Origin: Octopus sinensis
Lineage: Eukaryota
DNA: 64,000 nucleotides
NCBI RefSeq assembly: GCF_006345805.1
Contig: NW_021832721.1
Coordinates: 1-64,000, forward strand
Direction: 5' to 3'
Below, in pieces: positions 161-61,420 of the stretch (within the stretch, counting starts at the first letter, position 1; the number at the start of each line of letters is the position of its first letter). The position numbers and the translations under genes were made by a program. The notes beneath the pieces were generated by a model, which searched no databases, was not told the origin of the DNA, and worked only from the letters and a program-made list of their open reading frames with translations.

Positions 161-232
161 AGAAATCTTAACCCGGGAATATCATCGAAAGTTCCTACTT
201 GAATTGTCTCGATATTATTTTCATTCAAATAT
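161..232 (-). CDS. LRR exon E1 (family A): [23 protein letters not shown](L)
   Basis: 72 nt, acceptor TTACAG, donor GTAAGT, open frame, phase 2/2. Confidence 0.93.

Positions 233-61420: not shown

What the first reader, a model, noticed from the sequence alone, without database searches (positions are those of the whole stretch)
161..61420. Replacement-biased divergence focused on the predicted concave binding face
The two residues before the conserved Asn (xLxxN) take 22 different values among 27 exons (NE, RG, AE, NG, DF, GS, QN, SD, RH, SS, NS, IS, GD, NR, ER, SY, RY, DN, AG, GN, VY, YQ). The framework is nearly constant, including the codons TCC AGT TTA. Hand counts between close paralogues: E5 vs E10 has 11 differences, 1 synonymous. 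E24 vs E25 has 11, about 2 synonymous. E1 vs E3 has 12, changing 8 residues. E20 vs E21 has 8, 2 synonymous. In VLRs and plant LRR receptors these beta-strand x positions contact ligand. The samples are small, so positive selection is suggested, not shown.
Basis: partly seen in the sequence, partly recalled or inferred. Interest (0 to 1): 0.8.

Follow-up and report, generated by a model that had tools for sequence, protein, structure and literature searches.

The report
Octopus LRR exon array, diversifying concave face
The window holds 27 tandem one-repeat exons of a large, unannotated octopus leucine-rich-repeat receptor gene; amino-acid changes pile up on the predicted ligand-binding face somewhat faster than neutral, a familiar pattern for LRR receptors, and here likely but not proven.

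Summary
The minus strand carries 27 LRR exons with AG/GT borders. Twenty-six are intact at 72 nt, phase 1. E2 is 71 nt with an in-frame TGA.

The array is functional. Framework omega is 0.23, and exons show 1 indel event against 26 expected from the flanking introns.

It grew by tandem duplication of exon-plus-short-intron units, because the intron flanks are homologous. My own codon models use those flanks as a neutral yardstick; intron rate over synonymous rate is 1.0.
- Concave sites (x2, x3, x5, x7, x8): omega 1.8.
- Convex x sites: 0.8.
- Concave versus convex: p = 1.6e-5.
- Concave = 1: p = 0.0025, and a parametric bootstrap shows the test is calibrated.

The excess over neutral is fragile. 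It drops to omega 1.6, p = 0.04, when multi-nucleotide codon changes are modelled. Pooled Nei-Gojobori counts give only 1.13, not significant. Only x2 and x7 stand out singly.

A paralogous Octopus bimaculoides locus repeats the pattern (1.66, p = 0.03). The exon unit belongs to an octopus-only LRR adhesion-GPCR family already reported as positively selected.

No orthologue could be retrieved, and recombination was not formally screened. The concave focus is shown; positive selection is likely but not proven. This is a new member of a known kind.

The parts
61349..61420 (-). E27, first LRR exon in the window ([23 protein letters not shown]); belongs to no exon family
53392..53463 (-). E26, LRR exon, family E
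52536..52607 (-). E25, LRR exon, family B
50065..50136 (-). E24, LRR exon, family B
47915..47986 (-). E23, LRR exon, family C
43036..43107 (-). E22, LRR exon, family E
40527..40598 (-). E21, LRR exon, family E
35012..35083 (-). E20, LRR exon, family E
27913..27984 (-). E19, LRR exon, family A
26497..26568 (-). E18, LRR exon, family B; only 123 nt of intron before E17
26302..26373 (-). E17, LRR exon, family A
23031..23102 (-). E16, LRR exon, family B
21332..21403 (-). E15, LRR exon, family E
21157..21331 (-). Minimal 175-nt intron between E15 and E14. It is the conserved downstream flank element joined directly to the conserved upstream flank element, which I read as the ancestral short intron of the duplicated unit.
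21085..21156 (-). E14, LRR exon, family E
18312..18383 (-). E13, LRR exon, family D
16696..16767 (-). E12, LRR exon, family C
14918..14989 (-). E11, LRR exon ([23 protein letters not shown]), family D; has Tyr at the I11 framework position
12814..12885 (-). E10, LRR exon, family D
12511..12582 (-). E9, LRR exon, family C
12042..12113 (-). E8, LRR exon, family D
10136..10207 (-). E7, LRR exon, family C
8490..8561 (-). E6, LRR exon, family D
6904..6975 (-). E5, LRR exon, family D
4965..5036 (-). E4, LRR exon, family B
3575..3646 (-). E3, LRR exon, family A
1993..2063 (-). E2, family B, only 71 nt. A 1-bp deletion relative to its relatives gives an in-frame TGA. It is a dead exon (skipping it keeps the frame) or an assembly error.
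161..232 (-). E1, last LRR exon in the window, family A. The gene continues beyond the window start.

Best explanation
The window lies wholly inside the LRR-coding part of one large, unannotated gene of an octopus-type genome.

Shown:
- Each 24-residue LRR is one 72-nt, phase-1 exon.
- The array grew by tandem duplication of exon-plus-short-intron units, often two exons at a time. Transposons later inflated the introns.
- The exons are kept functional. The framework residues L1, L4, L6, N9, I11, I14, F19 and L22 are under purifying selection, and indels are purged.
- Replacement changes accumulate fastest at the positions that flank and alternate with the beta-strand on the inner face, above all x2 and x7. 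Their rate is at or above the neutral rate set by synonymous sites and by the homologous intron flanks.

Inferred:
- After each exon duplication, selection favoured new side chains on the concave surface, so the solenoid offers a long and heterogeneous binding face.
- The gene is an N-terminal ectodomain of the octopus-specific LRR adhesion-GPCR family. Its ligand is unknown. The role is possibly cell-cell or chemotactile recognition, given that family's reported expression in axial nerve cord, suckers and skin.
For: Anatomy: 27 exons in one orientation with canonical splice sites.

Function retained:
- Framework omega is 0.23.
- There are 51 gap events in 1636 aligned intron nt against 1 in 842 exon nt. 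Expected at the intron rate is 26; P = 1e-10.

Duplication origin:
- Intron flanks are homologous for about 60-250 nt on each side.
- The minimal 175-nt intron consists of the two flank elements fused.
- Exon types alternate in pairs.

Selection:
- MG94xHKY fixed-site-class model on five family trees, with an intron partition: omega is 1.82 concave, 0.82 convex, 0.23 framework. Intron rate over synonymous rate is 1.007.
- LRT concave = 1 gives p = 0.0025. LRT concave = convex gives p = 1.6e-5.
- F3x4 variant: 1.84, p = 0.003.
- Single NJ tree of all 27 exons: 2.08, p = 1e-4.
- Parametric bootstrap: 132 null replicates with mean 1.02 and maximum 1.54. 4.5% exceed 3.84 and none reach the observed value.
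- All five families give concave 1.4-2.7 and convex 0.57-0.91.
- Label permutation puts the concave set in the top 0.9%.
- Replicate on 20 exons of the paralogous O. bimaculoides locus L001: 1.66, p = 0.029.

Structure: the AlphaFold model of paralogue P0012 has pLDDT 85-97 over the LRRs. Strands of period 24 fall on x3-L4-x5, and short helical turns fall on x16-F19. The best solved matches are LGR4/5 and TLR ectodomains.

Family:
- E1 plus its intron flank is 83% identical to an exon of the P0012 gene.
- The false N-terminus of P0012 is the translated upstream intron element, which the window also has.
- The C-terminal module of that family occurs only in Octopus and is followed by GPS and 7tm_2 gene models.
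- PMC6408891 describes this octopus adhesion-GPCR expansion with LRRs and signatures of positive selection.
Against: - Omega above 1 is method-dependent. A model that allows double and triple hits fits better (p = 5e-4) and lowers the estimate to 1.60, p = 0.04.
- Pooled NG86 on 13 independent sister pairs gives 1.13, not significant, against synonymous sites, and 1.42, p about 0.04, against introns.
- The fraction of concave codons with an amino-acid difference (0.55) is near my hand estimate of the neutral expectation, about 0.49. The excess lies in multi-difference codons.
- Only x2 and x7 exceed 1 individually. Several convex x sites have omega 1.3-1.5.
- Exon and intron distances disagree in family D: E5-E13 is 0.143 in the intron and 0.319 in the exon, whereas E5-E10 is 0.160 and 0.153. 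This hints at gene conversion, which can inflate such tests. No formal recombination screen was run.
- All comparisons are between paralogous repeats. No orthologue was found.
- The models are my own implementation, not PAML or HyPhy.
- Membership in the adhesion-GPCR family cannot be seen in the window itself: it contains no LRRCT, GPS or 7TM exon.
- There are no expression data.
Confidence: 0.55

Rival explanations
1. Relaxed constraint only. All x positions are close to neutral after exon duplication, and only the framework is constrained. The apparent omega above 1 on the concave face is then an artefact of multi-nucleotide mutations, short gene-conversion tracts between repeats, and small samples.
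For: - The multi-hit model is preferred and cuts the signal to p = 0.04.
- NG86 dN/dS at concave sites is 1.13, not significant.
- Amino-acid-different concave codons are 0.55, against my hand estimate of about 0.49 under neutrality.
- Ten of 16 x positions have omega between 0.8 and 1.5, none different from 1.
- Exon and intron distances are discordant in family D.
- 22 of 27 dipeptides is what shuffled columns give.
Against: - Concave omega exceeds 1 in all five families and in an independent locus.
- First and second codon positions at concave sites differ at 0.37-0.385, against 0.247 in homologous introns and 0.215 at concave third positions.
- The LRT is calibrated, and no null replicate reached the observed value.
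- Even with multi-hits, omega is 1.6.
- Pure neutrality does not explain why concave sites exceed equally unconstrained-looking convex x sites at p = 1.7e-4.
Confidence: 0.3
2. Combinatorial exon use. Every exon is 72 nt and phase 1-1, so any subset splices in frame. The array could act as a menu from which alternative splicing makes many receptor isoforms, and cassette diversity would be selected for that purpose. This is compatible with, not exclusive of, the best explanation.
For: - Exon symmetry holds throughout.
- A dead exon (E2) is tolerated in the array, and a dead exon also sits in the paralogous locus.
- Intron flanks are conserved next to every exon.
Against: - The intron flanks evolve at the synonymous rate (rho = 1.0), so they carry no detectable extra constraint.
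- The minimal introns fold no better than shuffles, with z = +0.9 and +1.0.
- Exon types alternate as in an ordinary LRR super-repeat.
- There are no transcript data.
- Symmetric 72-nt LRR exons are also the rule in Slit and LGR genes, where they are mostly constitutive (own knowledge).
Confidence: 0.08
3. Decaying pseudogene array, or VLR-like germline cassettes that are not spliced exons.
For: - One of the 27 exons is frameshifted.
- No gene model for this locus exists in the protein collection.
- The introns are filled with transposons.
Against: - 26 of 27 reading frames are open.
- There is 1 indel against 26 expected.
- Framework omega is 0.23.
- Every unit has a polypyrimidine-AG acceptor and a GT donor, and all lie in one orientation. 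VLR cassettes do not (own knowledge).
Confidence: 0.03

Closest known systems
Octopus-specific LRR adhesion GPCRs ('group 3' of Ritschard et al. 2019, PMC6408891; models such as P0012 'toll-like receptor 5' of O. bimaculoides and 'adhesion GPCR G6-like' of O. vulgaris)
   Same: - Same LRR subtypes and the same 72-nt phase-1 exons.
- Same conserved intron flank elements.
- Clustered, fast-evolving genes confined to Octopus.
- Positive selection was already reported at gene level.
   Different: - The window's gene is not among the retrieved models; the best match is 47-61% identity.
- It has at least 26 intact LRRs, against about 14 in P0012.
- Its C-terminal module, GPS and 7TM parts lie outside the window and were not seen.
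- The site-class localisation of the selection signal to the concave face was not taken from the paper; it is my result.
Ectocarpus LRR-ROCO candidate receptors (Zambounis et al. 2012, PMC3341825)
   Same: - Each LRR is a single 72-nt, 24-residue exon.
- Exons are duplicated or shuffled.
- Non-coding LRR relics sit between exons.
- Positive selection falls on solvent-exposed LRR residues.
   Different: - Brown alga, cytosolic ROCO GTPase context, unrelated by descent.
- That paper describes its exon symmetry differently (it speaks of 'phase 0' exon pairs).
- Here duplication is local and tandem, and no exchange between loci was shown.
Slit and LGR4/5/6 genes of animals
   Same: - One LRR per 72-nt symmetric exon (own knowledge).
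- LGR4 and LGR5 ectodomains are the best solved structural matches to the paralogue's LRR domain, at 27-28% identity.
- Same typical 24-residue LRR class.
   Different: - Those are conserved single-copy developmental receptors and ligands under purifying selection.
- The octopus array is lineage-specific and longer, with near-neutral to accelerated x positions.
Lamprey/hagfish variable lymphocyte receptors
   Same: Diversity is concentrated at concave beta-strand x positions of 24-residue LRRs, and many LRR units lie in a genomic array.
   Different: VLR cassettes are non-spliced donor fragments copied somatically into an incomplete gene (own knowledge). Here every unit is a canonical exon in one orientation, and nothing suggests somatic assembly.
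Plant NLR / RLP and animal TLR ectodomains under diversifying selection at xxLxLxx
   Same: Omega is highest at solvent-exposed positions of the xxLxLxx motif while the framework is conserved.
   Different: Those tests compare alleles or orthologues of immune receptors. This one compares paralogous repeats inside one gene of unknown ligand, so it speaks to diversification after exon duplication, not to an ongoing arms race.

Membership tests
Typical 24-residue extracellular LRR (LxxLxLxxNxIxxIxxxxFxxLxx; Pfam LRR_8 type) | Conserved L1, L4, L6, N9, I/L11, I14, F19 and L22 with period 24 | tested here: met
   Column composition: N9 27/27, F19 26/27, L1 26/27, L22 25/27, L6 24/27, I14 24/27. Paralogues P0012 and P0005 hit LRR_8 at E = 1e-74 to 1e-76.
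Typical 24-residue extracellular LRR (LxxLxLxxNxIxxIxxxxFxxLxx; Pfam LRR_8 type) | Solenoid with one short beta-strand per repeat at positions 3-5 forming the concave sheet | tested here: met
Strands of period 24 fall on x3-L4-x5 with pLDDT 85-97. LGR4 and TLR ectodomains are the top solved matches.
Octopus LRR adhesion-GPCR expansion (PMC6408891 group 3) | Shares the family's LRR exon-plus-intron unit | tested here: met
   E1 with its flank is 83% identical over 179 nt to L001:13919-14096. The upstream intron element of the window translates to the spurious N-terminus of P0012 at E down to 1.5e-5. L001 has the same 72-nt phase-1 exons.
Octopus LRR adhesion-GPCR expansion (PMC6408891 group 3) | LRRCT plus Cys-rich / SEA-like module, then GPS and 7tm_2 | not testable with these tools
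   tblastn found no such exon in the window, and the gene runs off the window at position 1. In paralogous loci L002 and L003 the module is followed by GPS and 7tm_2 gene models.
Sites under positive (diversifying) selection | Omega significantly above 1 at the concave class, against synonymous and intron rates | tested here: inconclusive
   - Omega 1.82, p = 0.0025.
- 1.84, p = 0.003 with F3x4.
- 2.08, p = 1e-4 on one tree.
- The bootstrap shows the test is calibrated.
- Against that: 1.60, p = 0.04 with multi-hits.
- NG86 gives 1.13, not significant.
- There was no recombination screen and there are no orthologues.
Sites under positive (diversifying) selection | Signal localised to the ligand-facing surface rather than spread evenly | tested here: met
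   Concave versus convex: p = 1.6e-5, 1.7e-4, 0.008 by counts. Label permutation gives 0.009. The direction holds in 5 of 5 families.
VLR-type somatically assembled cassettes | Cassettes lack splice sites, lie in mixed orientation, and flank an incomplete germline gene | tested here: not met
   All 27 units have AG...GT borders with a polypyrimidine tract and share one strand.
Dscam-type mutually exclusive exon cluster | Conserved intronic docking/selector RNA pairing; alternative exons are variants of one position | tested here: not met
   Intron flanks evolve at the synonymous rate (rho 1.0). The minimal introns fold no better than shuffles. Neighbouring exons are different LRR subtypes in a super-repeat. 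Exon usage itself could not be tested.

The most novel reading that the evidence does not exclude
The array might be a diversity generator at the RNA level. With 26 interchangeable in-frame LRR exons and distinct concave faces, regulated exon choice could give individual octopus neurons or sucker receptor cells different ectodomains of an adhesion GPCR. That would be an LRR counterpart of Dscam or clustered protocadherins, in an animal already known for protocadherin expansion. Nothing here excludes it, because no transcript data were available. Nothing here specifically supports it beyond exon symmetry and a tolerated dead exon.
Probability: 0.08. Interest if true: 0.8.

Novelty: new member of a known kind. 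Interest (0 to 1): 0.4.

Why it matters
It documents an unannotated receptor-type gene with at least 26 LRRs in a lineage-specific octopus adhesion-GPCR family. It also shows where on the protein that family's rapid evolution falls: the inner beta-sheet face, chiefly positions x2 and x7.

That gives experimenters a defined surface to mutate or swap when searching for ligands. These receptors are reported as expressed in arm nerve cord, suckers and skin.

The homologous intron flanks next to every exon provide an unusually clean internal neutral yardstick for studying how repeat proteins diversify after exon duplication.

The work also shows that current gene models of this family are fragmentary. 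One starts in translated intron, which matters for any family-wide analysis.

Tried and rejected
1. Intron divergence from BLAST HSPs suggested that exons evolve faster than introns. This was an artefact of local-alignment selection and of including splice signals. Curated MAFFT flanks give exon/intron ratios around 1, and I used those instead.
2. Orthologue search found nothing above 61% identity, so no between-species test was possible.
   - Whole 623-aa conceptual protein.
   - First nine LRRs, 216 aa.
   - Three-exon blocks against all 158 retrieved proteins.
3. I fetched family loci hoping to overlap the window.
   - L001 and L002 share only transposons and paralogous exons with it.
   - P0143 was not on record.
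Paralogue P0012 was modelled instead.
5. Selector/docking RNA structure in the minimal introns: z = +0.9 and +1.0, none found.
6. Extra or degenerate LRR exons: nhmmer found only hits with E above 2. The TCCAGTTTA at 673-681 is an intronic chance hit.
7. A tRNA origin for the abundant SINE: ARAGORN finds no tRNA.
8. Pfam on the C-terminal module of P0012 gave only LRR families. My reading of it as LRRCT plus Ly6-like plus SEA-like plus hormone-receptor-like rests on the sequence by eye and on the secondary-structure pattern, not on a database hit.
9. The distinct-dipeptide count is uninformative as evidence.

Full report
**Anatomy.** The minus strand of the window carries 27 units with the periodic LRR signature. 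Each is bounded by a polypyrimidine-AG acceptor and a GT donor, most of them GTAAGT.
- Twenty-six are exactly 72 nt: one base completing a Leu/Ile codon, 23 codons, then two bases (CT or AT). Every exon is therefore phase 1 at both ends and encodes one 24-residue repeat, L1-x2-x3-L4-x5-L6-x7-x8-N9-x10-I11-x12-x13-I14-x15..x18-F19-x20-x21-L22-x23-x24.
Transcription runs from E27 to E1.
- E2 (1993-2063) is 71 nt. A 1-bp deletion relative to its relatives gives an in-frame TGA.
- No LRRNT, LRRCT or other domain exon lies in the window, so the gene runs off both ends.
- Introns range from 123 nt to about 7.9 kb. They are full of SINEs, a reverse-transcriptase fragment and other repeats.
- The SINEs match Octopus bimaculoides copies at 84-94%.

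All are right.
- There are 22 distinct x7x8 dipeptides among 27 exons.
- Nucleotide differences are 11, 11, 12 and 8 for the four quoted pairs, with the stated synonymous counts.
- The dipeptide count is not informative. Shuffling the two columns gives 24.1 distinct pairs on average, and x2x3 gives 20.
- The quoted pairs lean to the high end. Across 23 close pairs, whole-exon dN/dS runs from 0.14 to 3.5.
- By entropy x7 (3.22 bits) and x8 (3.08) lead. Next come x17, x2, x3, x20 and x16 at 2.4-2.65 bits, and framework sites are at or below about 1 bit.

**Real, working exons.**
- Among sister exons the aligned intron flanks carry 51 gap events in 1636 nt. The exons carry 1 in 842 nt, where 26 would be expected (P = 1e-10). 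The single event is E2.
- Framework codons have omega 0.23. N9 never changes, and F19 has omega 0.09.
- A decaying pseudogene array is therefore excluded.

**Origin.**
- The exons fall into five families, with E27 alone:
  - A: E1, E3, E17, E19.
  - B: E2, E4, E16, E18, E24, E25.
  - C: E7, E9, E12, E23.
  - D: E5, E6, E8, E10, E11, E13.
  - E: E14, E15, E20, E21, E22, E26.
- Flanking introns are homologous within families, and partly between them, for about 60-250 nt on either side.
- The 175-nt intron between E15 and E14 is simply the downstream element joined to the upstream element. The ancestral unit was therefore an exon plus a short intron, and other introns were later inflated by insertions.
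- Families alternate in pairs: D-C three times and B-A three times. That points to two-exon duplications.

**Selection tests.** Because the flanks are homologous, they serve as a neutral yardstick.
- A first estimate from BLAST HSPs made introns look more conserved than exons. That was a local-alignment bias.
- With curated MAFFT flanks and splice signals removed, exon/intron divergence ratios scatter around 1.
- I wrote an MG94xHKY codon model with three pre-specified site classes:
  - framework;
  - concave x2, x3, x5, x7, x8, that is the xxLxLxx positions;
  - the other x positions.
- It uses five family trees and an HKY intron partition that shares branch lengths with the exons.

| Quantity | Estimate |
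|---|---|
| omega, concave | 1.82 |
| omega, convex x | 0.82 |
| omega, framework | 0.23 |
| intron rate / synonymous rate | 1.007 |

- Synonymous sites are therefore not specially constrained. The recurring TCC AGT TTA codons reflect limited divergence, not selection on codons.
- LRTs: concave = 1 gives p = 0.0025; concave = convex gives p = 1.6e-5; convex = 1 gives p = 0.28.

Robustness checks that support the result:

| Check | Concave omega | p (concave = 1) |
|---|---|---|
| Exon-only | 1.88 | 0.0023 |
| F3x4 frequencies | 1.84 | 0.003 |
| One NJ tree of all 27 exons | 2.08 | 1e-4 |

- Parametric bootstrap under omega = 1, 132 replicates: mean estimate 1.02, maximum 1.54, 4.5% of LRTs above 3.84, none reaching the observed value.
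- All five families give concave 1.40-2.71 and convex 0.57-0.91.
- The concave five-site set ranks in the top 0.9% of all 4368 five-site subsets of the 16 x positions.

Checks that weaken the claim of omega above 1:
- A model with double and triple substitutions fits better (p = 5e-4). It lowers concave omega to 1.60 with p = 0.04, while concave versus convex stays at p = 1.7e-4.
- Pooled Nei-Gojobori counts over 13 independent sister pairs:

| Class | Proportion different |
|---|---|
| pN, concave | 0.326 |
| pN, convex | 0.211 |
| pN, framework | 0.070 |
| pS | 0.298 |
| intron | 0.247 |

- Those counts give dN/dS = 1.13 (not significant) and dN/K_intron = 1.42 (p about 0.04).
- At concave codons the first and second positions differ at 0.37 and 0.385, against 0.215 at the third. 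But 18 of 65 concave codons carry 2-3 differences.
- The share of concave codons that differ in amino acid (0.55) is close to my hand estimate of the neutral expectation, about 0.49.
- Per position, only x2 (3.17, p = 4e-4) and x7 (2.34, p = 0.004) exceed 1. x8 is 1.53, and several convex sites sit at 1.3-1.5.
- Exon and intron distances disagree within family D. That is what gene conversion would produce, and I ran no formal recombination screen.

**Replicate.** The locus of paralogue P0012 in O. bimaculoides (L001, CM046629.1, 10.40-10.48 Mb) has the same 72-nt phase-1 exons.
- I used 20 intact exons. The locus also has one dead exon at 19195 and one 69-nt exon.
- The same model gives omega 1.66 concave (p = 0.029), 0.99 convex and 0.15 framework.

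**Structure.** The spliced window protein could not be submitted, so P0012 was modelled with 15 family members.
- The LRR part has pLDDT 85-97.
- DSSP strands of period 24 fall on x3-L4-x5, and short helical turns fall on x16-F19.
- x2, x3, x5, x7 and x8 thus lie in or next to the inner sheet, as in solved LRR ectodomains.
- The best PDB matches are LGR4/5, then TLR7/8/9/13, LRRTM2 and LRIG1.

**Which gene family.**
- Searches with the conceptual protein found only generic LRR proteins plus two octopus relatives at 47-48% identity.
- P0012 continues after its LRRs into an LRRCT and a Cys-rich / SEA-like module. That module occurs only in Octopus species: 33 proteins, several named adhesion GPCR G6-like, one with 7tm_2.
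- In two genomic loci that module is followed by GPS and 7tm_2 gene models.
- The window shares that family's exon-plus-intron unit.
- Ritschard et al. 2019 describe an octopus-specific, co-localised adhesion-GPCR expansion. It has LRRs in 5 of 22 members, signatures of positive selection, and expression in axial nerve cord, suckers and skin (PMC6408891).
- Membership of the window's gene is inferred from the shared unit. It is not seen directly.
- The family's gene models are fragmentary. The N-terminus of P0012 is translated intron.

**Comparison and verdict.** One-LRR 72-nt exons are the norm in Slit and LGR genes (own knowledge). In Ectocarpus ROCO receptors the same architecture goes with exon shuffling, dead LRR relics and positive selection on exposed residues (PMC3341825).
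- VLR-like cassettes are excluded by canonical splice sites and uniform orientation.
- Dscam-like regulation has no support, because the intron flanks are neutral and no intronic RNA structure stands out.
The concave focus is shown. Positive selection is probable, at roughly 55-60%, but it depends on how multi-nucleotide changes and gene conversion are handled.
- This is a new member of a well-known kind, of moderate interest.

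Noticed in passing
window 21516-21634 (-): Full-length 5S rRNA match (Rfam RF00001, 108.8 bits, E = 5.5e-23, model positions 1-120), inside the intron between E16 and E15. It is a 5S gene copy, a pseudogene or a 5S-derived SINE.
   Followed up: partly
window 336-417 and 509-590: Inverted repeat of 82 nt, 89% complementary, arms 91 nt apart, in the intron between E2 and E1. It looks like a MITE-type element.
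   Followed up: partly
window 1993-2063 (-); L001 19195-19266 and 22125-22193: Dead or altered LRR exons sit inside otherwise intact arrays. E2 has a 1-bp deletion and a TGA. The O. bimaculoides paralogous locus has an LRR relic without a GT donor and a 69-nt exon lacking one codon.
   Followed up: partly
window ~1593-1823, 7901-8126, 15296-15527, 28222-28462, 40829-41071, 48323-48536, 56417-56652, 62278-62507: At least eight copies of one roughly 230-nt SINE, in both orientations, matching copies in O. bimaculoides loci L001 and L002 at 84-94% (a second, shorter repeat accounts for the 91-94% matches). ARAGORN does not call any of them a tRNA.
   Followed up: partly
window 43782-44300 (-); 31787-33652 (+); ~62560-62700 (-): Transposon remnants in introns: a reverse-transcriptase fragment (RVT_1, E = 9e-6, below the Pfam cut-off), a 621-aa ORF with no Pfam match, and a mariner-like 'ITGDDKWIL' stretch broken by stops (read by eye).
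   Followed up: partly
L001 12364-12519 (P0012 residues 1-35): The annotated N-terminus of the O. bimaculoides model 'toll-like receptor 5' is a translation of the conserved intron element upstream of an LRR exon. The model is 5'-truncated and misnamed. Further LRR exons lie upstream (L001 387-9814), and a new array starts after its 3' end (74086 onward).
   Followed up: yes
window 6904-18383 and 161-5036, 26302-26568: Exon subtypes alternate in two-exon units: D-C at E13-E12, E10-E9 and E8-E7, and B-A at E18-E17, E4-E3 and E2-E1. This indicates that duplications copied pairs of exons.
   Followed up: partly
window family D exons E5, E10, E13 with upstream flanks: Exon and intron histories disagree. 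The E5 intron flank is as close to E13 (0.143) as to E10 (0.160), yet the exons differ by 0.319 against 0.153. Either there was gene conversion between exons or the acceleration is confined to exons.
   Followed up: no
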